Below, piece after piece: positions 14,371-64,000 of a DNA stretch of 64,000 nt. The translations under genes were made by a program, and so were the position numbers. Numbering within the stretch: the stretch's first letter is position 1; each line of letters opens with the position of its first letter. A model generated the notes under the pieces. It was given only the letters and a program-made list of their open reading frames with translations, made no database searches and was not told where the DNA came from. The stretch covers positions 412,249 through 476,248 of the IMG/VR virus record IMGVR_UViG_3300018080_008436. One strand, given 5' to 3'.

Positions 14371-17300
14371 TTAACGTTGGTCGTTGTCAATCAAGTTGTC
14401 ATTTAACAACTTGGAACCAATCGTAAACGCTCCAGCGATTTTGTCCTGGAAGCTAGGCTCCTGGGCAGGCTGTGATTGAATTACGATAGCTGGAAGACCA
14501 GTTCCAGCAGTTTTAACTTGCTGTTCAGTAGAAGCAGTTTTAACGGCCTTAACTGGGAACATAGTTTCCGCAACTGAAGCAATTTTATCAACTTCAAACT
14601 GAGCTAATGCAGTAACAACATTATCAAATGTGCTCTTATCAGAAGCAATTCTGTTGTTAGCGGCTAACCATGAAGCAGTACGAAGAGCTTCCTCTTTACG
14701 TGCTTCCTTGATTCTAGCAAGTTGTTCTTCTCTTTTCTGTTGTACCTGTTTGAGATACTTATCATTGATGCCAGGCATATCTGACTGAGTTTCCTTCTCA
14801 ACGCCCATATAAGCGTTATCGATAGGTACATCAGGCTTAGGTGCGTTAACGTCGATGTTATCTGGTCCTTCCTGTCCCATAGTAGCTTTTGCTCTAGGAA
14901 CGTCTGGATTTGCCATCTTTACATCGATGTTGTCAGCGCCTTCATGACCCAAAGAAGCATCGGCTCTAGGAACTCCAGCTTCAACATCACCCTCAACGGT
15001 GTCAACTTCTTTCATCTTTTTCGCTAATGCAAGCTGTCTCTGAGCCTCTTTGAGGTTTTTCTCAGCTTCAGCAATTACAGTACCTTTAATCTCATTATTG
15101 ATTGCAGGCATATCTGATTGAGTAGCTTTCTCAATTCCCATGTAGGAACTATCAACAGCTACGTCTGGCAGACCAGCAGGTGGATTAATGTTATCTGCGC
15201 CTTCATGGCCCATGGTAGCATTAGATCTAGGAACCTGAGGTTTGGCCATAGGAACGTCAATATTATCTGCTCCTTCATTCATCATAGTTGCCTTACTACG
15301 AGGTACTCCAGCTTCAACGTCTTTCTCAATAGTTTTGATGAGCTTAGGCTTACCTGCCAACTTAATGTTGGACTCAGCGCCAGAGCGTCTTACTCTTGAG
15401 GAATTCATTGCCAAAGCCTCTGCAAGTGCGTCGGTATCAAATGTTTCCATATCTTCTCCTTCTGGAACTTCTTCAGCTTCAAATGCAACGTCCTCTGCGA
15501 TGTCCTCTTCCAAGGCTTCATCACCAGTATTTTCAACAACTTCGAGGTTGTCTCCAGTGATGGTTACAGATTCAACTGCGACTTCTTCTGGTTCTTCAAT
15601 AATCTCATCAACCTCTACATCGACTGAGTCGAGTGGTTCGAGATCATCTCCGATTTCAACTTCTTCCAAGATAGCCTGAGCTTTCTTGGCTAAGTTTTCT
15701 TCTTTCTGAATGAACAATTCGTTCATTGTAGCGAGATCGTATTGGCTAAGTGCAATCTTTCCTTCTTTTGCTTCATCAGCAAAAGCTTGGACGTAAATGT
15801 TATCAGATTCTTCTTTAGCGAACTTCTTCTTAATGCAGTTGCAAATTGAAGTTGCTTGAACAACATCATGTCCTTTGCTCTTTTGATCTTCAATACATTC
15901 ATCCATTGGATCTACTTGCATTAAAGTGTCAGCCAATTTTTTCATTTGACGGACTTTGGTAAAACCAAGTCTCTTCAGTTCTTTGCATACGCATTCAGCC
16001 AATGGCTTATCTTTGCAAGGACCGAATCTAGCTACAGTGTTTCCACCATAAGTTCTAGCAATTCTTTCAACGCAGTTAGCAGTTGGGAACGTATCGGCGT
16101 TAGCCTGAGCAGTCTTCAACATTCCAACAACCTTAAGCTTAGAAGCGAACTTCCTTGCTTCTTCTTTGCATTCTGGGCAACTATTGTCAGGAGAAAGATC
16201 CCATTCAACTCTTAACAAGCCGTTTGAAGGATTCTTACTACTAACAATGAGGTTCTTCTCGAAAGAAGTTCCGCATTGTCCGCATTCGCATTTGGTGCGA
16301 CCATCGCCGCTTGCGATGACATCACATTTCTTATTTCCGCAAGCTGGGCAGACATCGCCATGGGCCTCTCTGTTAGCGGCAATACGAACAATAGAATCTT
16401 TATCAATTCTAGTTTGAGCGGCAACTGGAAGTGCTGGCATTTCTTCAGGCTCTTCAGGGCCTTCAACGTCTTCCATACCTTCTTCGCCAACGCTTTTGGT
16501 AGGTTTGATGATTCTAAATTCAATTTCTTTCTTAATGAGAGCTTCGTATTCGGCTCCGCAATTCTGGCAGTTACCGATAATTCCACCGTCATCTTCTTTA
16601 GTTACATCAACATCAGATGAACCACACTCTGGGCAAATGCTCCAAGGAGCTTGCTTTTCGCCAACAGTTGGGATCTCATCCTCTAACTCATCCTCATTAC
16701 CAGTGGTGAGAGCTTGAAGAGCAGGATCTTCTCCCATTGGAGGAGCGTCAAGACCTTCCTCAGGAGCGCCTGGAGCGGCGACTTCGCCTGCGGCCCCTGG
16801 CATTCCGCCACCCATTGGTGACTGAGCAGTTCTTTTCATCTTCTTATTATTATAGGCAACCTGATTAAGGTTTTCCATTTCAATATCAGCGTCAAGTCCG
16901 TCCTCAATGCCTTCTCCTACGAGATCGCCTTCAGGAACGATTTCTTCTTCAATTGGTGCTACTTCTTCGCCAATCGGAATTTCAACTGACTCTTCGCCAG
17001 CATCAGTCTGGACAGCGATTTGAATGGTATTACCATCAATAGTAACATTAGTGATAGAAGCAAGCTTCATATTTTCAGTTGCTAAAGCGCCTTTAGCAAA
17101 CTTAACGATATCTTTCTTGAAAGTGGCAGAAGTCTTTTGAGAACCAAGTTCTTCGAAATCGGTTTCAATTACGATGTCTGCTCCATCAAGTTTTTCAGGA
17201 TTAAGAATTTCTTCCTGAGCCTGGACTCGCTTTCTTGATTCCAAAGAAGCTAGAATTTCTTCTCTTTCAGCATCTCTTTTAGCCTTTTCGTTTTTAACGA

Positions 17301-17460
17301 CAGCTTTGGTTGATGCTTCTTTAGTTTCTTTCTTCTCTTCTTTTTCTTCGCATTCTTCATCCTCTTCGTCACACTCTTCTTCTCCAGCGACAGCTTGCTT
17401 CAGAGCATTTCTAAGTTCGTCCTTAACGTTAACTTTTGCTACTGTAGAGGCTTCAGCAGT
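14371..17460 (-). CDS. C-terminal scaffold/core part of the prohead protease-scaffold protein (Zn-ribbons, internal repeats); reached by a -1 shift
   Basis: Frame is open 72 codons upstream of the TTG at 17244, up to ~17463, with no ATG/GTG; many CxxC pairs; repeated VEAGVPR...EGADNID units. Confidence 0.7.
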   Translation of the reverse strand, partial: TAEASTVAKVNVKDELRNALKQAVAGEEECDEEDEECEEKEEKKETKEASTKAVVKNEKAKRDAEREEILASLESRKRVQAQEEILNPEKLDGADIVIETDFEELGSQKTSATFKKDIVKFAKGALATENMKLASITNVTIDGNTIQIAVQTDAGEESVEIPIGEEVAPIEEEIVPEGDLVGEGIEDGLDADIEMENLNQVAYNNKKMKRTAQSPMGGGMPGAAGEVAAPGAPEEGLDAPPMGEDPALQALTTGNEDELEDEIPTVGEKQAPWSICPECGSSDVDVTKEDDGGIIGNCQNCGAEYEALIKKEIEFRIIKPTKSVGEEGMEDVEGPEEPEEMPALPVAAQTRIDKDSIVRIAANREAHGDVCPACGNKKCDVIASGDGRTKCECGQCGTSFEKNLIVSSKNPSNGLLRVEWDLSPDNSCPECKEEARKFASKLKVVGMLKTAQANADTFPTANCVERIARTYGGNTVARFGPCKDKPLAECVCKELKRLGFTKVRQMKKLADTLMQVDPMDECIEDQKSKGHDVVQATSICNCIKKKFAKEESDNIYVQAFADEAKEGKIALSQYDLATMNELFIQKEENLAKKAQAILEEVEIGDDLEPLDSVDVEVDEIIEEPEEVAVESVTITGDNLEVVENTGDEALEEDIAEDVAFEAEEVPEGEDMETFDTDALAEALAMNSSRVRRSGAESNIKLAGKPKLIKTIEKDVEAGVPRSKATMMNEGADNIDVPMAKPQVPRSNATMGHEGADNINPPAGLPDVAVDSSYMGIEKATQSDMPAINNEIKGTVIAEAEKNLKEAQRQLALAKKMKEVDTVEGDVEAGVPRADASLGHEGADNIDVKMANPDVPRAKATMGQEGPDNIDVNAPKPDVPIDNAYMGVEKETQSDMPGINDKYLKQVQQKREEQLARIKEARKEEALRTASWLAANNRIASDKSTFDNVVTALAQFEVDKIASVAETMFPVKAVKTASTEQQVKTAGTGLPAIVIQSQPAQEPSFQDKIAGAFTIGSKLLNDNLIDNDQR

Positions 17461-19940
17461 TTTTCATCAACTTTCTTACTGATACTCTGTTCACCAAGTT
17501 CGCCATCTGAGAGAACATCAACAGCATCAATAATAGTATCTGGATTAATAGTGTCATCAGATGCAATTACTCTCAACTTGTTAACAAGACAGTGTTCGAC
17601 TTCAGTTGGGGAAGCAGTTGCAACTTTTACGTTTTTGGCGTTCCAATAGGATGATCGCTTCGAAAAAGAAGCAGATTCAGAAGATTGAGGTTCTTCTAAC
17701 AAAGATCCTGCTAATCTTACACGTTCCTTAGTGGTTGCAACGCAGTTGTTCGCAATTTCTTGCAATTCTTGTGGGGTTGCTCCAGTTTCAAGGGAAACCT
17801 CTGCAAACGCTTCAACGACAGCATCCATGTGTTCCTTAGCGGACTTAAATAGAGATGCATCTCTGTTGGCCTGACGTGCCCATGCAGGATCGACATTGTC
17901 TAACTGCTTCTGGGTGATTACTTCAGGCTCATTGTTGGTACGATAGCCTTCACTATCCAATTGTTTTTGGGTGACAGTATGTTTGTCCTCATCCTTACGG
18001 GGAGATACACCATTACTATCATTATCCAATTGTTTTTGGGTAATGACTTCAGGTTCGTCATCCTGTCTGGGGTTCAGCTTCAACTCGCTGTCATCCAACT
18101 GTTTCTCAGTGATAACTTCTTTTTCACCTTTTCTTGGACTCGCGTTATCATTGCTGTCCAGTTGTTTTTGTGTGATGACCTGCTGTTCTTCCCCAGTGCG
18201 ACCGTGATACAACTCGGATCTGTGATCTTCGAGTTGTTTCTGAGTGATCACTTCTGGAGTTGCAAGAACGGTATTGGCACCAGCCTCTTTAGTTTCTTTA
18301 CTCATTCTTTCTACTCCTTCTCTTGGATTTGTTTTGGCGAATAAATCTAAAAATTGATGAGCCGCTACTTTTGGCGACTCACTGATTAAATTCTTATCTT
18401 GATCTGACAGATCGTCATAGGTCCAAATTTGCATTCTGTCAGAGTTAGTGTCCTCCGCGACGATGATAAATGAATCGTCTCTATTTTTCACTGCGAGTTT
18501 TAAATTACCAATTTGCATTGATGGTACTTCTTTTATATACTCAAAAAAGCTTTGTTTTTCCTGCCACGAGTCAGATAAAACTTGCATAGCTTTTTCACGT
18601 TGTTTTTCTTTACTAGCTACGGTTCGTCTTTTTCCCATAGATTTAACTCCCGTTTTATTCATTTTATCGCACAGACTCGCGGCCTTTTGCAAAACAGAAG
18701 CTCCGAACTCATAATGATCTACGGCCTCATCTGCGACTCTCCTAATTAAATGTGAACTCTGGGCGGCTGGACGCATAGGTGCGGTAATAGGCATCTGCGG
18801 TGTATTTACTGGAGGTTGCCCTGGCGCTCCAGTTGTCGTTCCAACTTCCATCGCTTGTTCTGAAGCAACTGGCATTGGTGCGGCATCTCTTGGAGCCGTT
18901 TCCAATCCCCCTCCTGGTGTTGGTGGTACTTCCCCTGTTGGAGGCATACCTTCTTCTGGAGCGTTACCCTCGGTTCCAGGAACCTGAGATTCAACACTTC
19001 CATATCCAGCCCCTACTAATTCATCTGACCAAGTTTGTAGACTAGCAATAATATCTACTAAATCACTTGCAAATTCAACTTCAACTTGTTGTCGGTTCTT
19101 AATCAAGTTAACAGCAATGTTCTCTAATGTTTCAAGAACCTGATTAATCTGATCAATTTCTTCCTGACTTGCATTTTTCTCAAGTGCCGCAGTCTTAATC
19201 ATTCTAAGGTAATTCTCAACATTGGCAACTCTTGCAAGATAATCATCGTTTGGAATTATACCTTCAATATGGCAACTTGGGCAAGCAGGATCAACAACTC
19301 CACTTAACTCAATAAACTTGATCCCATAATTATGTTCAAATACTGGTTCGTCTTTGAATTCCTTCACTTCGCCAGTTCTAACGTTTCTGGCCCTACCAGT
19401 AAATTTTCTGCTCTTTCTATTTCTAATATGTTCGCAGTAATCTTCAGTTCTCTCAGCTTTGTTTTCGCAAATACTGCAAGTACTGTATTCAACTGAAGCA
19501 CCCATGGAGACTCCAGTCATATATCCTTGTTCAATACCGCGACAAATATGAGGATAAGCATCTCTATCTACAAAAGCTATTGTATAAACAGCATTATCAT
19601 CTTCGTTCCATTCGGCCCAGATGATCTTACCTTTAGCCTTTTCTATATCTTGATTTTCATGATTGGTAAAGAAAGGGACACCTTCGAAACTCTTATAAGC
19701 TTTAAGCAATTCTTCTTTCGAAAATGAATCACCATTACTATTAGGTTCGTCAGCTTTGATTGCTTTAGCCCTGAAAAATAAAGCATTTGGATGCTTTGTA
19801 ATTTCTGCTTGAACAATCTTTTCTTTCTCTGAACCAGGCTCTATCAAAACTCTGCCAGAGGCAGTTTTAATCATAACCTCGTCTTCCTTAGAAATTTGCT
19901 CTACAGGACAAGGTTCGGTTAAAGCAACTTTTATTAACAT
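17439..19940 (-). CDS. prohead (maturation) protease with scaffold extension
   Basis: NSNGDSF...FFTNH...AKGKI...GVSMGASVEYSTCSIC...CEHI...FIELSGVVDPA, typical of HK97-type prohead serine proteases; located between portal and MCP. Confidence 0.8.
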   Translation of the reverse strand: MLIKVALTEPCPVEQISKEDEVMIKTASGRVLIEPGSEKEKIVQAEITKHPNALFFRAKAIKADEPNSNGDSFSKEELLKAYKSFEGVPFFTNHENQDIEKAKGKIIWAEWNEDDNAVYTIAFVDRDAYPHICRGIEQGYMTGVSMGASVEYSTCSICENKAERTEDYCEHIRNRKSRKFTGRARNVRTGEVKEFKDEPVFEHNYGIKFIELSGVVDPACPSCHIEGIIPNDDYLARVANVENYLRMIKTAALEKNASQEEIDQINQVLETLENIAVNLIKNRQQVEVEFASDLVDIIASLQTWSDELVGAGYGSVESQVPGTEGNAPEEGMPPTGEVPPTPGGGLETAPRDAAPMPVASEQAMEVGTTTGAPGQPPVNTPQMPITAPMRPAAQSSHLIRRVADEAVDHYEFGASVLQKAASLCDKMNKTGVKSMGKRRTVASKEKQREKAMQVLSDSWQEKQSFFEYIKEVPSMQIGNLKLAVKNRDDSFIIVAEDTNSDRMQIWTYDDLSDQDKNLISESPKVAAHQFLDLFAKTNPREGVERMSKETKEAGANTVLATPEVITQKQLEDHRSELYHGRTGEEQQVITQKQLDSNDNASPRKGEKEVITEKQLDDSELKLNPRQDDEPEVITQKQLDNDSNGVSPRKDEDKHTVTQKQLDSEGYRTNNEPEVITQKQLDNVDPAWARQANRDASLFKSAKEHMDAVVEAFAEVSLETGATPQELQEIANNCVATTKERVRLAGSLLEEPQSSESASFSKRSSYWNAKNVKVATASPTEVEHCLVNKLRVIASDDTINPDTIIDAVDVLSDGELGEQSISKKVDEKLLKPLQ
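17895..18260 (-). repeat. six degenerate (E/Q)VITQKQL protein repeats in the scaffold
   Basis: EVITQKQLEDHR, QVITQKQLDSN, EVITEKQLDDS, EVITQKQLDND, TVTQKQLDSE, EVITQKQLDNV. Confidence 0.85.
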
Positions 19941-44275: not shown

Positions 44276-47200
44276 TTACGAGTCTTTTTCGCTTAGCTTC
44301 TCACGTATGGATACTCCAAGTGCTCCGCTTTCACAATGACCGCCTGAGCAAGCGTCTCCAGCCCCGCCACCATAATTGTCTAAATTGCCATATTCATCTT
44401 CATAACATCCTGACCAGTCAACATCAATATATGTTCTAGTCAGATCTAACCACTTCTTCCAGTTCGCGACATCTTTAAGGCAATATGTCATTTTTCTAAC
44501 ATCACCTTCAAAATAGCGATCTGCAAATTGTTTTGCCCTTCTGACCCAATCCAATTTTTCTTTGTAGTTTTCTACATTATGGTTAAGCCAAGCTTCAAGT
44601 AGTTTGTCTGGAGAGTCAGGGGACAATCCTTCGTTTTTCCACTTGATCCCATTTGTTTCAAAATCTCTGGAGATCTTATTTCTTAAAGGATCAACATAGA
44701 TAATCTCTCCAATGCCAAGCAAACAATCACAAGCTTCCCAAAGATTGTCTTTAAATACTCTCAATCCGTCAACAATAAGACCGCTGGCGAATAAACTGCC
44801 ATCCCCATACTCTCTGACGATCTCTGTGATGGTCATAACTGCCGTAAAAGGCGCTTGAGGGTAATCTTTGTCCCCAGACATAGGTAACATAGAAATTCCC
44901 GCATAATACCTTCTATTGCGATAAATGTGGTTAGCAACATCATCCCATTCATGTGGCTTGATGTTAATAGTGTTTGATACATTATGTCTTAGCCAAGGAT
45001 AAATAGCCGTATCATGTCTTGTCCCTGACTCAACCCAATTCTGTTGAGTAAGCTTAACATTCTCAAGAAGAGTTATGGCACCGACCTGATTTTTGGTTTT
45101 GGCTCCATCAGGAACTTCGCATAAGAAGGTAATAACAACATCAGTGTTATTATTTGACCATACTGATTCTTCGATAGCATCTGGGTTATGTTTTTCAAAA
45201 TATTTCAGCGGAGTCTCAAGTTTGTTTGCTTGAACTCTCCTGAAATATCTTTTGGCATGATGAGGATGAATCCCAGATGCAGTTCCCAAAACACAACTCG
45301 TAGATCCAGCAGGCTTAACACATGTAGCTCTTGCACATAAATTGATGCCAAGTATTCCTGCAATCTTCTCATTAGTTTTAAGAATAAGTTTAGCACCCTT
45401 CCTTTGTAATGCAGGATCAAAGGCCATATCAGGATTATCTGCCATACCTGTCATAGAAACACCGAGAAGTGCCTCAAGCTTTACGATTTCCTGAGTGATG
45501 TTGCCCAAATAATGAAAGGTATCATACGAAGCTTGAATAGTGCCAATGATTGCCGCCGCTTTACAAGAGTCAAGAAAATCCTCTTCGGTTTTAACCTTCT
45601 TTACATTGATCTCACATAAATTGCAAAATTGCCATCCGCTAAGATATTCATTATTGTCCTGAGCGATAACAGCAGAGGCAAATTCTTTGCGGAATTGATC
45701 ATTCAAAGGGAGCTTTGGGACCATGCCGATTTCAACACAGTTATGTACATAAACTCCGTTTCCATCGAACGCATGAACAACGGGAACAGTACAATCATAT
45801 ACTTTTTCAATCCCCTTACTCTCTTTAGAGGCAACTGTAGCTATGAATTTACTCTTATTTGGTTTTCTTTTATATTGACTCAACAAACTATCAAGTTTTT
45901 GAATTTTATATGGTTCTGAAAACCCGATCCTATTTCTATAAACCCAAATAGATTCATTTGAAATAACAAGTTCATGGGCCGTTTGGCAAAAATAATCTTT
46001 TTTACCACCTTTTCCGTCAGGCATTGGTTTAAAACCCTCACCTCTACGGTTTTTATAAACTTTAGACACAATACCAAGGCGGAGGAGCATCCTTTGTACA
46101 GTTTTTAAATTGTTAAGAGAGATGCTGTGTAAACGTATTGACATCCCCTTCTTTAAATCGCCCTGGACAGATCCATCTGCATCAAAATACCCCTGAAGGA
46201 ACCCTCTATACATATCTGAAGAACTTCCCTCTATTTTACACCCTATCTCCTTTTCACCACGTTTTATTCCGTAGTATTCTGCCATCTTTTTTAACCCAGA
46301 AGAATATAACCTTAATTTACCGACATTTGACGTTTGTTTTCCTCCTGTCATTTCTTTATATGTATGAAGTCCTGACATTTTTATTCTTTTGATAGCCATC
46401 TTCATCATATGAGACCTTGACTCTCCCCAATAGTCAAGCAATGCACTATTTTTAGTAAAGGTTCCGTCCCCAAGCAAACTGCCCAACAACCAACCTTTAT
46501 CAAAGGTTTCATGAAACCCTTCTCCCTTCCATGTAAGATTTTGGTGATTATGTAAAACTATTTGATCTCCAACGTTTAGGTCTTTCAGTTCAACCCAACC
46601 CTCTGGAGTCATTATCTGGTGATTACTGGTCGCCTCTATGCAAAATCCCTCTTTAGTTTCTAAACCAAAAAGCTCTTTTTCCCCAGTTTCAAACATCCCC
46701 TTTTTTGTAGTAGGATATACTTGACCATCAACTATTGCTCCAAACTGTTTGCCCAAAAGATTTTTTGCTTTCTTCGGGCCATGATCTGTCATAACCCAAG
46801 TGTCACCACTAACACATGGATTATAAACGATGTCATTACTTTCTGCCCAAACGAAGCCTGGTTCACCAAATTCTTTGTTCAATTCAATGAATTTCATGAA
46901 CTGCTCTTTGGAGGTTTCGCTTCGCACTAAAATAACAGAATTATTTGATCTTCCTCTTTGAGGATTCTCTTTGCGCCAAGCGCCAGTTTTGGCTTTTGCC
47001 ATCTCTTCGTCTTCAGGAGAGAATAAACAAATAGATGCACTGCGGCGAATTCCACCAGACAAAACAGCATCAGAGGAATGCATCATGATATCATAAGCAT
47101 CAATTGGCCTAAGACAGTCACCAAACTTACAACATCTATTAAGCAGAACATTGATATTATATAGTGATATTTTCAGTCCATCTGGTCCAGGGGCCTTGCT

Positions 47201-47779
47201 TCCTGAGGAAATTGGAGCACCTTCTGGTCGAATTTGGGAAAAATCGAAGATCACTTCATATCCTTGATATTCTGGGAAAGGAACGTCATCTCCAATAAAA
47301 AATGAAGATAACAAAACCCCGACAGAATCGGCCCATCCTTCGATGCTGTCTGGGATTACGAAAGTCTTAGTCCCTTTAGTCGGGTTGGCTATGCCAGGAA
47401 GCTTCGCGACATGGTGGGTTTGAACTGAAAATCCGATTCCACAACCACAAAGTAAAAGGAACATACCTTCTTGAAAAAATCTTGGTCTGTCACAATACGA
47501 GACCGTACAATTGTATAACTTCTCATGCTTGTCTAGAATTGGTTTCCCCCCAAACTGCAATGCCCTTTGAGATCCAAGAACCCTTTTTCTTCGAACCATT
47601 CGTTCTGCGAAATCCATTTCTTCTTTTAATTGCTCACAAATCTCTGGCCCAAGCTTCTTTCGATGCATGTCAAATACTCTAGTGACTTGTTCTTCCCAAG
47701 TCTCTCGTCTTTTCATCTCAGGTAGGTATTTGGCATACTTCGAAAAACGTGTATATTCTTGAAGTGCTCTGACGGACAT
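44276..47779 (-). CDS. nrdJ: class II (adenosylcobalamin-dependent) ribonucleotide reductase with intein
   Basis: RRETWEE, YNCTV, GCGIGFSV, GGIRRSA, GEPGF, NP[intein]CVEI, CNLCEIN, TCVKPAGS, HNVSNT and C-terminal CSGGHCE. Confidence 0.9.
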   Translation of the reverse strand: MSVRALQEYTRFSKYAKYLPEMKRRETWEEQVTRVFDMHRKKLGPEICEQLKEEMDFAERMVRRKRVLGSQRALQFGGKPILDKHEKLYNCTVSYCDRPRFFQEGMFLLLCGCGIGFSVQTHHVAKLPGIANPTKGTKTFVIPDSIEGWADSVGVLLSSFFIGDDVPFPEYQGYEVIFDFSQIRPEGAPISSGSKAPGPDGLKISLYNINVLLNRCCKFGDCLRPIDAYDIMMHSSDAVLSGGIRRSASICLFSPEDEEMAKAKTGAWRKENPQRGRSNNSVILVRSETSKEQFMKFIELNKEFGEPGFVWAESNDIVYNPCVSGDTWVMTDHGPKKAKNLLGKQFGAIVDGQVYPTTKKGMFETGEKELFGLETKEGFCIEATSNHQIMTPEGWVELKDLNVGDQIVLHNHQNLTWKGEGFHETFDKGWLLGSLLGDGTFTKNSALLDYWGESRSHMMKMAIKRIKMSGLHTYKEMTGGKQTSNVGKLRLYSSGLKKMAEYYGIKRGEKEIGCKIEGSSSDMYRGFLQGYFDADGSVQGDLKKGMSIRLHSISLNNLKTVQRMLLRLGIVSKVYKNRRGEGFKPMPDGKGGKKDYFCQTAHELVISNESIWVYRNRIGFSEPYKIQKLDSLLSQYKRKPNKSKFIATVASKESKGIEKVYDCTVPVVHAFDGNGVYVHNCVEIGMVPKLPLNDQFRKEFASAVIAQDNNEYLSGWQFCNLCEINVKKVKTEEDFLDSCKAAAIIGTIQASYDTFHYLGNITQEIVKLEALLGVSMTGMADNPDMAFDPALQRKGAKLILKTNEKIAGILGINLCARATCVKPAGSTSCVLGTASGIHPHHAKRYFRRVQANKLETPLKYFEKHNPDAIEESVWSNNNTDVVITFLCEVPDGAKTKNQVGAITLLENVKLTQQNWVESGTRHDTAIYPWLRHNVSNTINIKPHEWDDVANHIYRNRRYYAGISMLPMSGDKDYPQAPFTAVMTITEIVREYGDGSLFASGLIVDGLRVFKDNLWEACDCLLGIGEIIYVDPLRNKISRDFETNGIKWKNEGLSPDSPDKLLEAWLNHNVENYKEKLDWVRRAKQFADRYFEGDVRKMTYCLKDVANWKKWLDLTRTYIDVDWSGCYEDEYGNLDNYGGGAGDACSGGHCESGALGVSIREKLSEKDS
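45740..46816 (-). mobile_element. 359-aa intein with LAGLIDADG homing endonuclease, inserted before the catalytic Cys of RNR
   Basis: Begins CVSGDT, block B ATSNHQI, WLLGSLLGDG and FLQGYFDADG motifs, ends VYDCTV...VHN followed by C. Confidence 0.92.
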
Positions 47780-50267: not shown

Positions 50268-51044
50268 ATGATTAACAACAAAAATAATTGGTATTCTGAG
50301 GCTAGAGAAGCCTCTTTAATCGTTCAAGAAGCTGGTATCACTGATAACTGGAAAACATTGGTGTTTGCGGTTGCACTTGTTTTATCAGGGTTATCTCTAA
50401 TTGATGTATCTGAGAAGACTGGATTACCACCTGAACAAATACAACAAGCCCTCAATAATAAAGAAATAGTTGAACAAGCTCAAAATCAGGAAGAATCATC
50501 AATGCCTAGATTAGATTTCTCTGGAATCGAGGAATTAATTCGACAGCATGAAGTTTCTGGTGCCGAAAGGTATGTTAGAGTTAAAGGTAAAAACGTTGAC
50601 ATAAGAAAAGCATATCCTGATCCTATTCATGGATGGAAAGTTCCAACCATTGGTGTTGGTTATAATTTAAACAAACCTGAAGCCAGAGGGGAAATTGAAG
50701 CTCTAGGACTAGATTATGACAAAGTCCGTAAAGGAGAGCAAGCCCTAACTGATGAACAGGTAAATATACTATACCGAGACGATATAGCAAAAGCAATACT
50801 TTCTGCAAGAAGATTCCTACCGAATTTCGATCAACAACCAACTGAAGTAAAAACAGTAATCGTAGACATGGCTTTTAATTTAGGTGAAACCCGATTGAGA
50901 AAATTTAAAAAATTCAGGAAAGCGCTCGAAAACAACAATTATCAAGAAGCCGCAGAAGAGATGAAAAACTCTAGGTGGTATCATCAAGTTGGGAATAGAG
51001 CGAAAAGAAACGTTGAAAAAATGTTGGAATTTCACTCCAAATAG
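50268..51044 (+). CDS. T4-type (GH24) lysozyme with WY-type leader and hydrophobic helix
   Basis: IRQHE...AYPD...PTIGVGYNL, DMAFNLG, SRWYHQVGNRA; N-terminal NNWYSEAREA and LVFAVALVLSGL. Confidence 0.85.
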   Translation: MINNKNNWYSEAREASLIVQEAGITDNWKTLVFAVALVLSGLSLIDVSEKTGLPPEQIQQALNNKEIVEQAQNQEESSMPRLDFSGIEELIRQHEVSGAERYVRVKGKNVDIRKAYPDPIHGWKVPTIGVGYNLNKPEARGEIEALGLDYDKVRKGEQALTDEQVNILYRDDIAKAILSARRFLPNFDQQPTEVKTVIVDMAFNLGETRLRKFKKFRKALENNNYQEAAEEMKNSRWYHQVGNRAKRNVEKMLEFHSK

Positions 51045-51190
51045 CCTATTTTTTCTCCCAGAATCGTAACACTTATATAATACTATATCTTACTTATTAA
51101 TATAATAACTTATTATAATAATAAAGGCGAAACCCAACTTTCACAAACCATTGATAACTTTATTGTTACATAAGTGCTATTTATTTTTCG

Positions 51191-51298
51191 TTAGTAAAAA
51201 TTACTAACCCTTGAGCCACACTTTAGTAAAAATTACTAACGAAAAATTAAAGATTAGTAAAAATTACTAATTTGCCATTTTTTAGTAAAAATTACTAA
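51191..51298. repeat. four identical 17-bp palindromes TTAGTAA-AAA-TTACTAA
   Basis: Copies at 51191, 51223, 51254 and 51282. Confidence 0.95.
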
Positions 51299-51447
51299 TT
51301 TGCAAAAATCTTGCATTTTTTCTTGGAATCAGAAAATGTGGTTGTATAATGACAATATGCTTTCGAAACCAATTGTTTTGAAAGTGAACCCTTCCTAGCG
51401 GGGTATAGGCTAGAGAGCGAGAGACATAATAAAAGGAGAAAAGTATC

Positions 51448-52371
51448 ATGTCTAATGAAACGCCCACCGACTCTTGGGAGTCAAGAATCAACCAAGTTGC
51501 TAAGATCCTTAGCAAAACCCCAGATGACATTGAGGAAATCCTCAGTGCAGATCCGTTCAGAATTACTCAGGACCCAAACCGTCTTGAGATGCTGGCGGAT
51601 GAAGAAGTAACCCCATTCGGAGATCTTCGCAAGATGTTTTGCGATGAGAATGGAGTTTCCCTACCCCAATTACGTATGTGCATGAAAGTATTACGTGGAC
51701 CTAAAGGTAGCCAGAAGGCTTCTGAAATGGATACAAACGTACTTGCTTTCAATGCTAAGTATGGATTGGAAACTCATGTAGAAGATCTGGACATTGAACA
51801 GATCCTCCCATTCTACAATCCCAAAAAGCGCAATAGAATTCATGAACTCATTCGTGATCGTTATGAAAGTGAGTTCGGCCCTGTTATCGCTTTCAAACCG
51901 AACTCTGAAAAGATTGCTGTTGAAGAAACACTTGATTACATTGCTGATCTTGAATCTGGCCTTCCAGCAGAAGAAAGTATCGAGGTAGATGGGGAACTTG
52001 TCCGTCTTTATAAAGTTGGAGAAGTTCCAAACGAAAAGGTCGATGAAGATCCACTCTTCCCAGACTGTCCATTGAGAAAAGGCCGTTCTACTCATAACAG
52101 AGTGAATTGGACTGACATCTCAATAGAAGTTCGTCAATTCTTCCGCATTCTTCATGAGTATTCTGAGGATATCGATCCAAACAATCGTCTTGAACTACGT
52201 AAAGTGGTTCGTCTTCCTCTTGATGAACTTAGAGAAATCTTCCCAGAAATCTATTTGATTTACAAAGAGCTTAAGGCAGACAACAAACTGCCAAGTTTGA
52301 AGATGTCTTTAAGAACCGTTACTTCAAGAACGCAAAATCCATTTGCCATTGGCAGAAACAGAACTCGATAA
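51448..52371 (+). CDS. hypothetical protein
   Basis: 307 aa, strong AAGGAG SD, TGTATAAT at ~51343-51350. Confidence 0.75.
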   Translation: MSNETPTDSWESRINQVAKILSKTPDDIEEILSADPFRITQDPNRLEMLADEEVTPFGDLRKMFCDENGVSLPQLRMCMKVLRGPKGSQKASEMDTNVLAFNAKYGLETHVEDLDIEQILPFYNPKKRNRIHELIRDRYESEFGPVIAFKPNSEKIAVEETLDYIADLESGLPAEESIEVDGELVRLYKVGEVPNEKVDEDPLFPDCPLRKGRSTHNRVNWTDISIEVRQFFRILHEYSEDIDPNNRLELRKVVRLPLDELREIFPEIYLIYKELKADNKLPSLKMSLRTVTSRTQNPFAIGRNRTR

Positions 52372-52425
52372 AAATATAAGGGAGTGGGGTTATCCTCACT
52401 CCCTTTACTTTCTGGGAGAATAATT

Positions 52426-53571
52426 ATGAAAAATTTTGATACCGTATGGGATTATGAATACTGGATGAAATCCAATGGGATGTTTGTTGGACTAAATACC
52501 CCCGAAGCTCTTAAGTCCGAAGATTTTAATCATGGTCTGCCACCATATGCTAGAAGAAAATCATTTCTAGTAGATGAATACCCAGCTTGCCCTAAAAACT
52601 GGATGCAAAGTGAAGGAACGTTAGCCAGTTATTTTGTTCCTGTAAAAGAAGGTAATGGAATGTGGTTAGATTTCAATAAAAACTATGACCATGACTATGA
52701 TGTGGCTATCGTCATTTCAATTCAAGGTGTAAACCCAATTTCAGGTTTACCTTGTAAAGATGAATATCTGGAGCAATACATTGAATGTTGTCCAAAATGC
52801 GAGACTCCTTTCAAACCAGATAGGTTGTGTGAGAAGTGTAACATTAGATATCCTAAGCAGAATTATATTGCTACAACTACAACTCCAAAAGGCAAACTTT
52901 GGCTTGATGGGTTCAGAAGTTTAGAGGGTATCGTTCGTCAATACATTTTAACAGCAGAAAAAATGAGAGGTGTCGCATCTAACGTAAAAGGAGTTGGGAG
53001 CAATAGAGTGTTCGCTATTGGAGTCTCTTTCTTTTTAAGTAAGGAAAAGAAACCAGTATATGAATCTTCATCTTCGTCTTCATCATGGGGGTTCCCATGT
53101 TCATCATCTTCTTCGTCTTCTATTGGAAGTGCATCATCATCTTCGATTCCTGACGCTTATGAAGATGATGACGACGATTACACATATTTGGATATGGATT
53201 TTGAAAGTATAAGTAGCGCTGACAACAAATCCAGTGAGAGTTACAAGATTACATGTGACAACTCTGACATACATAAAGTTTTTTCCAAAAAATCACGTCT
53301 CTCTAAACCACAACGTTCAGCCAAACCAGTAACTTGCAACTTTATCCAACAAGTTAAAACCAAAAAGCTTGAGGTTGGTGCTGGAGCGAACATTGATCAA
53401 CAGGTTTATGATGATAACGAAAAGATTGATTTCTGGAGAAGTGAACCTGAAGCCAGAATTTGCGTAAATTACGTCCTTGAGGAAGACGCAGTTAAGATCA
53501 TTGAGCAAGGAAGAAGAATATTGGAAGGCCACAAGGAAGGCTTTCTGCAAAACGTACCAGTAGGAAATTAA
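52426..53571 (+). CDS. conserved protein of unknown function (MWLDF...VNPISG...WLDGF...VRQY...GAGA.I.Q family) with Zn-ribbon insert
   Basis: Start reassigned to 52426; motif pattern recalled from an uncharacterised family; CPKC..C..C insert. Confidence 0.65.
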   Translation: MKNFDTVWDYEYWMKSNGMFVGLNTPEALKSEDFNHGLPPYARRKSFLVDEYPACPKNWMQSEGTLASYFVPVKEGNGMWLDFNKNYDHDYDVAIVISIQGVNPISGLPCKDEYLEQYIECCPKCETPFKPDRLCEKCNIRYPKQNYIATTTTPKGKLWLDGFRSLEGIVRQYILTAEKMRGVASNVKGVGSNRVFAIGVSFFLSKEKKPVYESSSSSSSWGFPCSSSSSSSIGSASSSSIPDAYEDDDDDYTYLDMDFESISSADNKSSESYKITCDNSDIHKVFSKKSRLSKPQRSAKPVTCNFIQQVKTKKLEVGAGANIDQQVYDDNEKIDFWRSEPEARICVNYVLEEDAVKIIEQGRRILEGHKEGFLQNVPVGN

Positions 53572-53582
53572 GGAGAATTAAA

Positions 53583-54281
53583 ATGCCTAGAGAAGATTAT
53601 ACCCATTTAGTTTTTGTCGTTGATCGTTCTGGATCTATGTCTGGAATCGCATCAACAATGTGTGAAGGATATAACGGACTTATGGTTGATCAAAGAGAAG
53701 TCGATGGTAAAGCAACCGTCACATTAGCTCAATTTGATGACCGATATGAGTTGTTATATGATATGGTTGACATTGAGACCGTTCCAGAGCTTACATTGCA
53801 ACCAAGAGGCTGTACGGCCCTTCTGGACGCAATGGGAAGGACCATGAATACTGTCTTAGAACAGATTATGGAGATGGAAGAGTCTGAAAGACCAGCAAGA
53901 TGTCTGTTTGTTACCATTACTGACGGTGGAGAAAATTCATCAATGGAATATACCAGAGATCGGATTTTCCAAATGATCCAGGATTGCCAGGAAAGAGACG
54001 ATATTAACTTTGACTTCACTTTCCTTGGAGCTAACCAAGATGCTATCGCTGTTGGTGGAGGTCTTGGTATTCGTCAAGATGCGGCTTTGACTTATGCCGC
54101 AAACAATGTCTCTGCTCAAGCAATGTGCGATACTTTGTCAAGAAGCATGACGCAGTATAGATGTTGTAAATCTAGGGATGCTTCATTGAGTTATTCTCTT
54201 GAAGATCGGGAAAATGTATTGGGAGAAAACCCCCTTGTCCCTGACATCGATTCTGATGTAATCAAGAATTTCAAGAAATAA
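53583..54281 (+). CDS. von Willebrand factor A domain protein
   Basis: MIDAS DRSGS, GCTALLDA, ITDGGENSS, FLGANQDA. Confidence 0.88.
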   Translation: MPREDYTHLVFVVDRSGSMSGIASTMCEGYNGLMVDQREVDGKATVTLAQFDDRYELLYDMVDIETVPELTLQPRGCTALLDAMGRTMNTVLEQIMEMEESERPARCLFVTITDGGENSSMEYTRDRIFQMIQDCQERDDINFDFTFLGANQDAIAVGGGLGIRQDAALTYAANNVSAQAMCDTLSRSMTQYRCCKSRDASLSYSLEDRENVLGENPLVPDIDSDVIKNFKK

Positions 54282-54369: not shown

Positions 54370-54942
54370 ATGGGTAAAGAAGACACCAATCCCTGCAACA
54401 ATCTTGAAGACAACCGAATTATTTATGTAAATGGAAATTTCAACGAAGAAATGACCAAGAACATATATGAAAAGCTAATAGCACTGGAAACAAAAGATCC
54501 TAGAAAAGACATTTTCATGGTCATTGACTCTTATGGTGGATACTGCCACAGCTTCCTTGCAATTCATGATGCCATGAAAATGTGTAGGTGTGATGTTGCA
54601 ACGTTTTGTATTGGGAAAGCTATGTCATGTGGGCAAATGTTATTGATGTCTGGGACTAAGGGTAAGAGATTTGCCTCCCCAAATTGCAGAATACTTGTCC
54701 ATCAACTTTCTAGTGCTTGTTGGGGAACTTTGTCAGAAATGCAGGTCGAAGTTACTGAGAGTGAAGAAATCCAGAAAATTATGGACAAAATCATTCTTGA
54801 GAACACTGGGATGACCAAAAGGGAATTAAAAAAGCTGATGTCAAGAGATTCTTATCTATCTCCAGAAGAAGCTATAGAATTTGGAATTGTTGATAAGGTC
54901 GTTACCAGTTATAAAGACATTTACAAAACGGTAAAAATCTAA
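54370..54942 (+). CDS. clpP: ClpP-family serine protease
   Basis: IDSYGG, GKAMSCG (Ser), ILVHQ (His), RDSYLSPEEAIEFGIVDKV (Asp). Confidence 0.9.
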   Translation: MGKEDTNPCNNLEDNRIIYVNGNFNEEMTKNIYEKLIALETKDPRKDIFMVIDSYGGYCHSFLAIHDAMKMCRCDVATFCIGKAMSCGQMLLMSGTKGKRFASPNCRILVHQLSSACWGTLSEMQVEVTESEEIQKIMDKIILENTGMTKRELKKLMSRDSYLSPEEAIEFGIVDKVVTSYKDIYKTVKI

Positions 54943-61894: not shown

Positions 61895-64000
61895 TTATCC
61901 AAAACCAAATAAACAGTATTGATCTGGGAATGCCTCTGATGAACTTGAACTTTCGGAGAATCCTTCGCTTGAACTTGAACTTGAACTTTCGGAGAATCCT
62001 TCGCTTGAACTTGAACTTTCTGAAGAAGAGCTTTCTGAAGAAGAGCTTTCAGAGAAACCCTCTGATGAACTGCTACTTGAATCTTTAGAACTACTTGATG
62101 ACGAAATATCAGCTTCAAAACAAGTTGCCATTGCTGACAAACTGATATTAGTACCAGTAACAGTAGTTCCTGTTTCAGTGTACCACCTACCTTTAATGGT
62201 ATAGGTTCCTGCTGGTAATTTATTTTCTGTTCTTACAAAAATTGAGCAACTTCCATCTTCATTAGCTGTTCCATGACTTCTTCTAATCTCACCATAATCA
62301 GTTCCATCAATGTTGATCGTGAAAAGAACATCTCTATTTGCAACATCTGCTGATGTCTGTAATGTCATGCATGCAAAAATGTGGCCCTCTTGATTTAACT
62401 GTAGGGTTATGGAAGATCCATCTATATCCTCTATGGAAGTTGCAGTTGTTGTATCAGAATTAACTATTGTCTGGGATGATGGAAGAAACTCTTCTTGATT
62501 TGTTTCGCATCCGAAGGCCGTAAGCATAAATGGAGCACCAGTGGCAGTAACTGGAGATTCAACACTCCACCTTCCTTTAACTGTTATGTCTCCAGGACCA
62601 AAGTTACTTCCAGTTCTTGAAGCTATACATATAGAAGATCTGTCTCCTGCACTTGAATGGAACCTGGTAATAGGCAACTCTTGACCACCAATGTTCAGGG
62701 CGCAAGTAATGTCTTTGGCGGCTCCACCAGAAATGTATGTGGTTGCAGATAGGAAACCAAAAATTGGATGGTTCGTCTGCATGGTCAAGTCTTGAGTTAA
62801 GCCATCAATATCCTCTAGTGTTGCAGATGTTGTTGTGTCATTTGCAACTGTATCATATATTGATGGGATTTCATTTCCATAACAACTCTGCATAGGAATG
62901 GCGATAACAGTGATGCTAGTTGCAGATAGAGTTCCTCCTTCAGTATACCATCTACCTTTAACTGTGTATGTCCCTGCTGGAAGAGTGCTTGGAGTTCTAT
63001 AAACAACACCAACACTACCATAATCATTTGAACTTGACTGGTATCTAGTAATCACAGGAGAATCTGTTCCATTGATGCTAATGGCGAAATAACCTTCTTG
63101 GTTATTAGTTGTATTGTTGCTTGATAACGACATGAATCCCATTATGTGGGCATCGTCAACCAATATAACGTCAACGCTTGCTCCATCGATATCCTCAAGA
63201 GCGGTTGTATTGGTTGTGGAGTCAGATGCAACAACTGCTCTTTCAACAAACATGCAATTAAGACATTCCAAGCTTGAAGAGCTACTTGATGAACTGCTAA
63301 ATCCTTCACTACTTGAGCTTGAAGGAGAAGATTCAGAAATACTTGACGATGACTCAGACAGAGATGAAGACGATTCGGACTGAGAACTCTCTGAGAAAGA
63401 ACTCTCAGATTGACTACTGCTGGATTCTGATGTACTACTTGAGCTAGATGATTCTGAGCTTATACTTTCAGTAAACTCATCGCAGTGTCTGTACCTAAAA
63501 TGAACGTTCTCTGTAGAACTACTTGATGAGTTACTACTTGATGATTCACTCTGCGAACTTGAACTTTCTGAGAATCCTTCGGATGAACTGCTTGAAGGAG
63601 AGGATTCCGACTGACTAGATGATGATTCTGATTGAGAACTACTAGACTCACTTTGTGATGACGAACTCTCTGACTGAGAAGATTCACTTTGAGAACTAGA
63701 ACTCTCTGACTGCGAAGAACTGGATTCAGATTGAGATGAATCGGACTGACTACTTGAGCTTTCAGACTGACTACTTGAGCTTTCAGATTGAGATGAATCG
63801 GACTGACTAGATGAACTTTCAGATTGACTACTTTCACTTTGTGAACTGCTTGACTCTGATTGACTACTTTCAGACTGAGATGATTCACTTTGAGATGATT
63901 CCGATTGACTACTTATACTTTCGGTAAATAAATCGCATAACAAATATTTGTAATGAACGTTTTCTGTTGAACTACTTGATGATTCACTACTTGAGCTTTC
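61895..64000 (-). CDS. Ser-rich modular fibre protein, start lies beyond the window edge
   Basis: Frame stays open from 63943 to 64000; (SQSESSS)n tracts; three repeats of TT.T..EDIDG...T.KGRW domains. Confidence 0.75.
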   Translation of the reverse strand, partial: ESSSSESSSSSTENVHYKYLLCDLFTESISSQSESSQSESSQSESSQSESSSSQSESSQSESSSSQSDSSQSESSSSQSESSSSQSDSSQSESSSSQSESSSSQSESSQSESSSSQSESSSSQSESSSSQSESSPSSSSSEGFSESSSSQSESSSSNSSSSSTENVHFRYRHCDEFTESISSESSSSSSTSESSSSQSESSFSESSQSESSSSLSESSSSISESSPSSSSSEGFSSSSSSSSSLECLNCMFVERAVVASDSTTNTTALEDIDGASVDVILVDDAHIMGFMSLSSNNTTNNQEGYFAISINGTDSPVITRYQSSSNDYGSVGVVYRTPSTLPAGTYTVKGRWYTEGGTLSATSITVIAIPMQSCYGNEIPSIYDTVANDTTTSATLEDIDGLTQDLTMQTNHPIFGFLSATTYISGGAAKDITCALNIGGQELPITRFHSSAGDRSSICIASRTGSNFGPGDITVKGRWSVESPVTATGAPFMLTAFGCETNQEEFLPSSQTIVNSDTTTATSIEDIDGSSITLQLNQEGHIFACMTLQTSADVANRDVLFTINIDGTDYGEIRRSHGTANEDGSCSIFVRTENKLPAGTYTIKGRWYTETGTTVTGTNISLSAMATCFEADISSSSSSKDSSSSSSEGFSESSSSESSSSESSSSSEGFSESSSSSSSEGFSESSSSSEAFPDQYCLFGFG

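What the first reader, a model, noticed from the sequence alone, without database searches (positions are those of the whole stretch)
51060..51350. Four identical 17-bp palindromes next to an AT-rich tract: candidate origin or operator array
Seen: TTAGTAAAAATTACTAA at 51191, 51223, 51254 and 51282 (periods 32, 31, 28 bp). A very AT-rich tract (~51070-51125) precedes them and a TGTATAAT promoter for the 51448-VWA operon follows. This is the largest non-coding gap in the window. Inference: phased binding sites for a dimeric protein, either replication iterons with an unwinding element or a repressor array.
Basis: partly seen in the sequence, partly recalled or inferred. Interest (0 to 1): 0.6.

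Follow-up and report, generated by a model that had tools for sequence, protein, structure and literature searches.

The report
Regulator binding-site array in a megaphage
The four identical 17-bp repeats are real, strongly conserved binding sites for an unidentified dimeric DNA-binding protein of a ~524-kb uncultivated phage; they sit upstream of a phage promoter and belong to a four-locus site set, so they are most likely a gene-control element, not a replication origin.

Summary
Four exact copies of TTAGTAAAAATTACTAA lie at 51191, 51223, 51254 and 51282. The most AT-rich 56 bp of the window precedes them and a TTGGAA-16-TATAAT promoter (with TGTATAAT) follows.

The window belongs to a 476-kb record cut from a ~524-kb phage contig. 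That record holds exactly 10 perfect sites and 1 degenerate site, all intergenic, at four loci.

In a relative whose proteins are about 54% identical, the same intergenic region carries five perfect copies. Site columns are 68/68 identical; spacer columns are 12/40. Two other loci are conserved in further relatives. The recognised element is TTAGTA-W5-TACTAA, and the basic unit is a pair of sites 28 bp apart.

At two loci the nearest site ends 44-45 bp upstream of TGTATAAT, a genome-wide phage promoter motif. No site overlaps a predicted -10 or -35 element.

Best reading: operators of a phage-encoded dimeric regulator acting from upstream on the orphan-orphan-VWA-ClpP operon. A replication origin is not supported: the sites are multi-locus, there is no skew signal, and no replication genes are adjacent. 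The binder is unknown; a ParB/Srx-like protein is only a candidate. This is a new member of a known kind, of moderate interest.

The parts
51191..51207 (.). Site 1 of the array (TTAGTA-AAAAT-TACTAA), the most distal; centre about -158 from the predicted start
   Evidence: Exact match. The orthologous array is conserved in L041.
51223..51239 (.). Site 2; 32 bp from site 1; centre about -126
51254..51270 (.). Site 3; the distal member of the promoter-proximal pair; centre about -95
   Evidence: A 28-bp pair recurs at all four loci of the genome and in relatives.
51282..51298 (.). Site 4; promoter-proximal; it ends 44 bp upstream of TGTATAAT; centre about -67
51070..51125 (.). AT-rich tract (89% AT) with three TATAAT-like hexamers. 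The blocks ACACTTATA and ATTATAATAATAARGG are conserved in L041. Its role is unknown: possibly an upstream promoter or a bendable/UP-like region.
51323..51350 (+). Promoter TTGGAA-16-TATAAT containing the phage-wide TGTATAAT motif (51343-51350)
   Evidence: Scan. TTGTATAAT is conserved in L041. The motif occurs 62 times genome-wide; about 38 copies are intergenic, nearly all oriented with the next gene and mostly 20-40 bp before its start.
51357..51447 (+). Predicted ~90-nt leader with a Shine-Dalgarno sequence (AAAGGAG). It has an 11-bp hairpin that is not significant against shuffles. The blocks GCAATRTG and AAYCCTTCCTA are conserved in L041.
   Evidence: No Rfam family reaches its gathering score.
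50268..51044 (+). Upstream co-directional gene: a lysozyme-like protein with a hydrophobic N-terminal segment. No terminator lies between it and the array.
   Evidence: Pfam Phage_lysozyme, E = 1.8e-7. Terminator scan. The L041 ortholog is 52% identical.
51448..52371 (+). First gene of the controlled operon: a 307-aa orphan. It is absent from the same position in relative L041.
52384..53571 (+). Second gene: a 395-aa orphan
53583..54281 (+). VWA-domain protein (phrog_7371). In L041 this gene directly follows the array.
54370..54942 (+). ClpP-family protease; the last gene of the + strand island
   Evidence: Pfam CLP_protease, E = 1.3e-52.

Best explanation
The four 17-mers are high-affinity operators for one sequence-specific, twofold-symmetric (dimeric) DNA-binding protein. 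That protein is most likely phage-encoded, and its identity is not established.

**The element.** The recognised sequence is TTAGTA-W5-TACTAA. Sites are used in pairs 28 bp apart. The locus in the finding has the largest array, with two extra sites at 31-32 bp.

**Position.** The array lies entirely upstream of a promoter of the phage's own TGTATAAT class. Site centres are at about -67, -95, -126 and -158. That promoter drives the + strand operon 307-aa orphan / 395-aa orphan / VWA / ClpP.

**Other loci.** The same protein would occupy three further loci of the genome:
- Locus B: a pair at the same distance upstream of another TGTATAAT promoter.
- Locus D: three sites in an 800-bp repeat-rich control region.
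- Locus C: a pair between a stop codon and its terminator.
Together these form a small regulon.

**Inferred mechanism (not shown).** The bound protein controls initiation from an upstream position. Two modes are possible:
- It could activate or architecturally remodel a promoter that largely lacks a -35 element, as upstream-binding phage activators do.
- It could block transcription that enters from the upstream lysozyme-like gene or the AT-rich tract.
I rate activation somewhat above repression.
For: **Shown**
- The 476-kb record holds exactly 10 perfect sites plus 1 degenerate site. All are intergenic and fall at four loci; shuffles give 0.13. The 37 kb read from the part missing from the record hold no further site.
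- Relative L041 has 54% identity in the VWA protein and 52% in the lysozyme-like protein. In the same intergenic region it carries five perfect copies. Site columns are 68/68 identical, spacer columns 12/40, and the rest of the intergenic region 166/307.
- Locus D is conserved in L308/L333, L247 and L336. Locus C is conserved in L311, where the stop codon again falls inside a site and a terminator follows.
- In L247 the centre is flipped (TTT). In L146 the centres are CTG, CCA and AAA between unchanged arms. So it is the arms that are read, as for a symmetric dimer.
- Four of the five base changes in the three degenerate copies break the dyad pairing, one leaves a wobble pair, and none is compensated. 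This argues against selection on a hairpin.
- A 28-bp pair is present at every locus and in the relatives L041, L308/L333, L247, L311 and L336.
- The proximal site ends 44 bp (locus A), 45 bp (locus B) and 53 bp (L041) upstream of TGTATAAT.
- TGTATAAT is a genome-wide promoter-like motif, oriented with genes.
- In L373 a single site ends 7 bp upstream of TTGAAA-16-TATAGT.

**Inferred**
- That the sites are protein-binding sites.
- The direction of regulation.
Against: - No binding protein is identified. Pfam, PHROGs and NCBIfam give no regulator next to any locus.
- Locus C lies between a stop codon and a terminator, with no promoter in sight. That does not fit a simple operator.
- The distances from site to promoter are not phased: about 40, 48, 57, 58 and 66 bp to the -10 centre.
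- The promoters are consensus predictions only. No RNA data exist.
- Identical sites in phages with about 54% protein identity would also fit a host factor.
Confidence: 0.6

Rival explanations
1. The 17-mers are parS/OB-like loading sites for the phage's ParB/Srx-like protein P0001 (G000 16872-17756, minus strand). The complex would serve partition or condensation of the 524-kb genome. Alternatively it would act like KorB of plasmid RK2, a sliding clamp that silences promoters at a distance.
For: - The sites are palindromic and lie at several loci at variable distance from promoters. One locus (C) has no promoter and sits 1.35 kb downstream of the P0001 gene.
- The AF2 model of P0001 has pLDDT 96. 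Its best PDB matches are ParB, Noc, KorB, PadC and sulfiredoxin: Foldseek probability up to 1.0 with E = 1.4e-3, and VIA Z of 5-6.4.
- P0001 carries a DGQTR motif in place of the ParB GERR box. It has a weak PHROG hit to a ParB-like partition protein (E = 0.007).
- Two contigs carrying a 41%-identical ortholog hold a site 865 bp downstream of that gene.
- F sopC (tandem palindromes) and the N15 sites IR1-4 are precedents (PMC7205306). KorB OB sites are a precedent for regulation at a distance (PMC11790492).
Against: - Pfam ParB_N does not match anywhere in the record.
- No ParA-type ATPase was found.
- The structural Z-scores are middling, and the helical domain is not shown to be an HTH.
- Two other contigs with 43-44%-identical orthologs have no site in their 3-5 kb.
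- The reproducible 44-45 bp distance to TGTATAAT at two loci points to local promoter control.
Confidence: 0.14
2. The array plus the AT-rich tract is a lambda-like origin of replication: four dyad-symmetric initiator sites next to an unwinding element.
For: - Four closely spaced dyad-symmetric repeats lie 66 bp from the most AT-rich stretch of the window.
- Both the repeats and the tract are conserved in L041.
- The architecture resembles lambda ori (from memory: four dyad-symmetric iterons next to an AT-rich region).
Against: - The same site occurs at three other loci, without comparable AT tracts.
- Cumulative GC skew falls monotonically over 476 kb and only follows gene strand.
- No initiator or replication gene lies beside the array, and the DnaB-like helicase gene is at 328 kb.
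- The array keeps a fixed distance to a promoter, as at locus B.
Confidence: 0.07
3. The sites are recognised by a host transcription factor that the phage lineage exploits. That would explain identical sites in diverged phages.
For: - The 17-mer is perfectly identical in phages whose proteins are only about 54% identical.
- No phage regulator has been identified.
Against: - An exact-match scan of 185,579 species genomes gave only single hits in unrelated taxa. All fetched loci were rescanned.
- I recalled no known regulator consensus that fits.
- The host is unknown.
Confidence: 0.1
4. The repeats act as nucleic-acid structures. They could be RNA hairpins (7-bp stem, 3-nt loop) in read-through transcripts, or DNA cruciforms or hairpins such as the hairpin promoters of phage N4.
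For: - Each unit can form a 7-bp stem with a 3-nt loop.
- The array folds better than shuffles as single-stranded DNA (z = -5.5).
- Locus C lies in a 3' untranslated region.
Against: - About 25 perfect copies in about 7 genomes show no compensatory change.
- Four of the five substitutions in the degenerate copies break pairs.
- The stem is A/U-rich with one G-C pair.
- The centre and the orientation are free.
- The low folding energy follows trivially from the presence of repeated palindromes.
Confidence: 0.04

Closest known systems
Upstream activator sites of phage late or middle promoters (phi29 p4 sites upstream of PA3; P2 Ogr and Mu C dyad sites at about -55 of promoters lacking a -35) — recalled from memory, not tested here
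   Same: - Dyad-symmetric sites lie upstream of the core promoter of a phage promoter class that mostly lacks a -35 element.
- A small number of promoters is controlled.
- Several dimer sites form a nucleoprotein complex, as with phi29 p4.
   Different: - The site sequence is unrelated.
- The arrays hold up to five identical sites in 28-bp pairs.
- One locus has no promoter.
- No homolog of p4, Ogr or C was detected (not specifically searched for).
Dispersed operators of a phage master repressor (P1 C1 operators; lambda OR/OL) — from memory
   Same: - One 17-bp element is repeated at several loci of a large phage genome.
- There are tandem copies that imply cooperative binding.
   Different: - Classical operators overlap the -35, the -10 or the start. 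Here none does.
- P1 operators are asymmetric.
- No CI/Cro-type HTH gene reaches threshold in the record.
KorB-OB / ParB-parS / SopB-sopC and N15 IR1-4 (PMC11790492, PMC7205306)
   Same: - Short palindromes, some in tandem arrays, lie at several loci and at variable distance from promoters.
- A ParB/Srx-like protein is encoded 1.35 kb from one locus.
- The outer bases TTAG...CTAA resemble OB (TTTAGCGGCTAAA) and OA (TGTTTAGCTAAACA).
   Different: - There is no ParA and no Pfam ParB_N match.
- A CTP-binding motif is not evident.
- The binder is untested.
Lambda-type origin (four dyad-symmetric iterons plus an AT-rich region) — from memory
   Same: - Four dyad-symmetric repeats lie next to a very AT-rich tract.
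   Different: - The sites are multi-locus.
- The array is not inside or beside an initiator gene.
- There is no skew signal.
- The array is tied to a promoter.
Stoperators of Cluster A mycobacteriophages (PMC9283540)
   Same: - One repressor-type site is repeated in intergenic regions between co-directional genes.
- A roadblock role is conceivable for locus C and for read-through from the lysozyme-like gene.
   Different: - Stoperators are asymmetric, orientation-dependent, bound by a monomer, and number in the dozens across the genome.
- Here the sites are symmetric, their orientation can flip, and there are only four loci.

Membership tests
Iteron-type replication origin | A cluster of three or more repeated initiator-binding sites | tested here: met
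   Four identical sites within 108 bp.
Iteron-type replication origin | An adjacent AT-rich unwinding element | tested here: met
   89% AT over 56 bp, the richest stretch of the window, ending 66 bp before site 1. Unwinding itself is untested.
Iteron-type replication origin | A locus linked to an initiator or replication gene, with the sites essentially confined to origin and control loci | tested here: not met
   Neighbouring genes are lysozyme-like, two orphans, VWA and ClpP. The DnaB-like gene is 135 kb away. The same sites occur upstream of unrelated operons.
Iteron-type replication origin | A switch of strand composition (GC skew) at the site | tested here: inconclusive
   Skew is monotonic over 476 kb and follows gene strand. 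There is no inflection, and the test has little power here.
Iteron-type replication origin | Replication starts there | not testable with these tools
   Only contigs are available, not raw reads.
Transcription-factor operator array | A short dyad-symmetric site with half-sites about one helical turn apart | tested here: met
   TTAGTA-N5-TACTAA; the half-site centres are 10-11 bp apart.
Transcription-factor operator array | Sites under purifying selection relative to their flanks | tested here: met
   68/68 site columns identical against 12/40 spacer columns, between phages with 54% protein identity. Other loci are conserved in four further relatives.
Transcription-factor operator array | Sites placed at promoters | tested here: met
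   Loci A and B and the L041 array lie 44-53 bp upstream of TGTATAAT. The L373 site lies 7 bp upstream of a -35 element. Locus C is the exception. The promoters are predictions.
Transcription-factor operator array | For a classical repressor: overlap with the -35, the -10 or the start | tested here: not met
   No site overlaps a predicted core element.
Transcription-factor operator array | A cognate regulator is identified | tested here: inconclusive
   No regulator family lies next to any locus. Only weak HTH hits occur elsewhere in the record.
ParB-parS / KorB-OB | A ParB-family protein with an N-terminal CTPase domain and an HTH | tested here: inconclusive
   P0001 has a ParB/Srx-like fold in its N domain (VIA Z 5-6.4; Foldseek probability 1.0, E = 1.4e-3). 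Pfam ParB_N is absent. It carries DGQTR instead of GERR.
ParB-parS / KorB-OB | A partner ParA ATPase (for partition) | tested here: not met
   There is no AAA_31 hit, and only sub-threshold P-loop hits to CbiA. About 11 kb of the genome was not seen.
ParB-parS / KorB-OB | The protein binds the palindrome | not testable with these tools
   This needs EMSA or ChIP.
Stoperators | Asymmetric, orientation-dependent sites, dozens per genome | tested here: not met
   The arms are symmetric, the orientation is flipped in L247, and there are 11 sites at four loci.

The most novel reading that the evidence does not exclude
The 17-mers are loading sites for a divergent, ParA-less ParB/Srx-family protein (P0001; its family has more than 16,000 members, and its nearest protein-atlas clusters are mostly viral). 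That protein would act as a KorB-like clamp or silencer that coordinates a few operons of a half-megabase phage genome. This would give a large uncharacterised phage protein family a DNA target and a function.
Probability: 0.12. Interest if true: 0.7.

Novelty: new member of a known kind. Interest (0 to 1): 0.42.

Why it matters
Almost nothing is known about how uncultivated phages of half a megabase regulate their genes.

This work defines three things:
- A precise cis-element: TTAGTA-W5-TACTAA, used in 28-bp pairs.
- Its complete site set in one genome: four loci.
- Its conservation across a sparsely sampled clade of relatives.

It also identifies TGTATAAT as the genome-wide promoter motif.

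That gives a concrete bait for finding the regulator by cell-free expression and DNA-affinity capture. It also names the operons that regulator controls (orphan-orphan-VWA-ClpP, and an operon starting with a 118-aa gene).

The practical lesson is that 'iterons plus an AT tract' in a phage intergenic region should be checked genome-wide before being called an origin.

Tried and rejected
- **Origin by GC skew.** The skew is monotonic and uninformative.
- **DNA similarity to known phages.** No match.
- **Rfam.** Nothing reached a gathering score.
- **Leader hairpin.** Not significant against shuffles.
It is an orphan with no fold lead, and it is absent from this position in L041, which keeps the array. 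Unlikely.
- **N-terminus of the lysozyme-like protein as binder.** A weak HTH_3 hit (E = 0.07) was rejected. The putative recognition helix is acidic and differs between orthologs although the operator is identical. The preceding segment looks like a membrane anchor.
- **Genes flanking the other loci.** No DNA-binding family was found.
- **Other DNA-binding candidates without any link to the sites.**
  - A 192-aa protein with three HTH_17-like repeats (G000 19357-19935, minus strand).
  - An 84-aa HTH-looking protein upstream of P0001 (my reading).
  - An HTH plus LAGLIDADG-like protein at 302 kb.
- **RHH_1 and ParB_N.** Absent from the record.
- **Arrays upstream of VWA homologs in 54 more distant phage contigs.** None found.
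- **Larger relatives in IMG/VR.** None found.
- **Exact-motif literature search.** No paper.
- **RNA runs.** None hold the locus. The contigs of three DNA runs are identical here, so there is no population variation to exploit.
- **Helical phasing of site-to-promoter distances.** Not consistent.

Full report
**1. The observation**

- The window holds four exact copies of TTAGTAAAAATTACTAA at 51191, 51223, 51254 and 51282, with periods of 32, 31 and 28 bp.
- With up to three mismatches the tool lists 8 matches (these four places, each on both strands), against 0.62 expected from shuffles.
- Each unit has two perfectly complementary 7-bp arms around an AAA centre.
- The stretch 51070-51125 is 89% AT and is the most AT-rich 56 bp of the window.
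- TTGGAA-16-TATAAT lies at 51323-51350, with TGTATAAT at 51343-51350.
- The 403-bp gap 51045-51447 is the only non-coding gap of 300 bp or more in the window. It has no credible small ORF.
- Contigs of three sequencing runs from three studies (sediment and seawater metagenomes; one may be the window's own source) carry the array without a single difference.

**2. Context**

- The window is positions 412249-476248 of a 476,248-bp virus record.
- The record is a trimmed piece of a contig of about 524 kb. Cluster B and the window's array lie about 62 kb apart on that one contig. The 48 kb missing from the record hold ordinary phage-like genes and most of a 4210-aa ORF.
- Nearly all genes are on the minus strand. 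The array lies in a small plus-strand island: lysozyme-like gene, array, 307-aa orphan, 395-aa orphan, VWA, ClpP.

**3. The motif is not unique to this place**

- The record holds exactly ten perfect sites and one degenerate site. All are intergenic and fall at four loci (shuffles expect 0.13 perfect arm matches):
  - Locus A: the four sites of the finding.
  - Locus B: 1466 and 1494.
  - Locus C: 15474 and 15502.
  - Locus D: 31698, 31726 and 31973.
- The 37 kb read from the missing part add none.
- Every locus contains a pair 28 bp apart.

**4. Conservation**

- *Locus A.* An exact-match scan of IMG/VR found arrays only in the same phage and in a 24-kb contig, L041. L041 is syntenic: AAA ATPase 73% identical, lysozyme-like protein 52%, VWA 54%.
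  - Its intergenic region has five perfect copies, followed by TTGTTT-16-TATAAT and then directly the VWA gene.
  - Site columns are 68/68 identical, spacer columns 12/40, and the rest of the region 166/307.
- *Locus D.* Metagenome contigs give orthologs in L308/L333, L247 and L336.
- *Locus C.* L311 gives the ortholog. There the stop codon of the gene for a protein with an L7/L12-C-terminal-like domain again lies inside site 1. Three sites follow at 28-bp period, and then a terminator hairpin.
- *Variation in the centre.* In L247 the centre is TTT, not AAA, at the orthologous position. In L146 three abutting sites have the centres CTG, CCA and AAA.
- *Degenerate copies.* They change single bases without compensation.
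- *Conclusion.* The selected feature is the sequence TTAGTA...TACTAA read symmetrically. That points to a dimeric DNA-binding protein, not a hairpin.

**5. Relation to promoters**

- TGTATAAT occurs 62 times in the record. About 38 copies are intergenic, nearly all oriented with the next gene and mostly 20-40 bp before its start, and they have no common -35 element.
- I read TGTATAAT as the phage's own promoter class. Three sigma-70-like genes are present.
- The proximal site ends 44 bp upstream of TGTATAAT at locus A, 45 bp at locus B, and 53 bp in L041. Site centres are therefore at about -67, -68 and -76.
- In L373/L374 a single site ends 7 bp before TTGAAA-16-TATAGT.
- At locus D the pair lies upstream of a minus-strand TTGACA-16-TAAAAT promoter that is also recognisable in L308.
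- No site overlaps a predicted core promoter element.
- Locus C, between a stop codon and a bidirectional terminator, is the exception.

**6. Best explanation**

- The sites are operators of a small regulon, bound by a dimeric regulator that acts from upstream on the orphan-orphan-VWA-ClpP operon.
- Two modes are possible:
  - Activation or remodelling of a promoter poor in -35 information. Phage phi29 p4, P2 Ogr and Mu C work this way (from memory).
  - Blocking of transcription that enters from the lysozyme-like gene or the AT-rich tract. No terminator separates them from the array, and the tract carries conserved TATAAT-like hexamers.
- Binding, the direction of control and the promoters themselves are inferences.

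**7. The binder**

- The 307-aa product of 51448 is an orphan. It is missing at this place in L041, which keeps the array.
- A weak HTH_3 hit in the N-terminus of the lysozyme-like protein was rejected, because the helix is acidic and not conserved.
- The only lead is P0001, a 294-aa protein 1.35 kb from locus C:
  - It matches phrog_5931, and weakly a ParB-like PHROG family.
  - Its family has more than 16,000 members and no Pfam domain.
  - Its AF2 model has pLDDT 96. The best PDB matches are ParB, Noc, KorB, PadC and sulfiredoxin, but with middling scores.
  - No ParA was found.
  - One of three ortholog-bearing contig lineages has a site nearby.
- This keeps a KorB/ParB-like reading alive at about 0.14 (PMC11790492, PMC7205306).

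**8. Why not an origin**

- The sites are multi-locus.
- GC skew gives no inflection.
- There are no replication genes nearby; the DnaB-like gene is at 328 kb.
- The array keeps the same distance to a promoter as at an unrelated locus.
- The resemblance to lambda ori is real, which is why I keep this reading at 0.07.
- Raw-read depth over the whole contig would decide it.

**9. Other rivals**

- A host factor (0.10).
- RNA or DNA structure (0.04).

**10. Verdict**

- The feature is real, functional and clade-conserved.
'Origin' does not. 'Repressor array' is possible only in a non-classical sense.
- It is a new member of a known kind, of moderate interest.

Noticed in passing
G000 121,400-123,200 (outside the window): A CRISPR array inside the phage genome. 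It has at least 26 repeats of about 36 nt (GTCACAWTTRGCTCAAGTTTTTCTTGAGCCTGTACC, with an internal hairpin). Spacers are variable and some are duplicated.
   Followed up: partly
window 44276-47779 (-): A 1167-aa ribonucleotide-reductase-like gene interrupted by an intein with a LAGLIDADG endonuclease domain.
   Followed up: no
window 61895-64000 (-): This open-ended Ser-rich ORF is the C-terminal end of a 4210-aa giant gene cut by the end of the record. The 476-kb 'provirus' record is a trimmed piece of a ~524-kb contig.
   Followed up: yes
G000 genome-wide; window 51343-51350: TGTATAAT is a genome-wide promoter-like motif. There are 62 copies, about 38 of them intergenic, nearly all oriented with the next gene and mostly 20-40 bp before its start, with no common -35 element. 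Three sigma-70-like genes lie at 72.7, 73.5 and 133 kb.
   Followed up: partly
G000 16.5, 26.9, 31.7-32.5 and 150.1 kb; L308, L247, L373: A second repeated motif, CATTCNGTGCAT, has 17 pattern matches, 12 of them in + orientation in clusters within the first 33 kb. It co-occurs with the 17-mer at locus D and in relatives, 8-9 bp downstream of one site. In L308 it appears as GAATGC..GCATTC palindromes.
   Followed up: partly
G000 1.8-30 kb (for example 15373-15400): A family of about 30 near-identical bidirectional terminator hairpins (AAAAAGAGTACTACTG...CAGTAGTACTCTTTTT) punctuates a region of small genes. Relative L311 has a hairpin family of different sequence in the same role.
   Followed up: partly
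G000 1-1730: Repeats of TTTAGGGAACCC. Two of them lie between the locus B sites and its TGTATAAT.
   Followed up: no
L146 (1.4-kb MAG contig labelled Rickettsiales): Three abutting 17-mers with unchanged arms and variable centres, at a 20-bp period. The contig encodes a relative of a G000 gene at 232.6-233.2 kb, so it is probably a mis-binned phage fragment.
   Followed up: partly
G000 15283-15410 (+): A possible small RNA: a TATAAT-like element, followed about 125 nt later by a terminator hairpin, next to locus C. This is my reading only.
   Followed up: no
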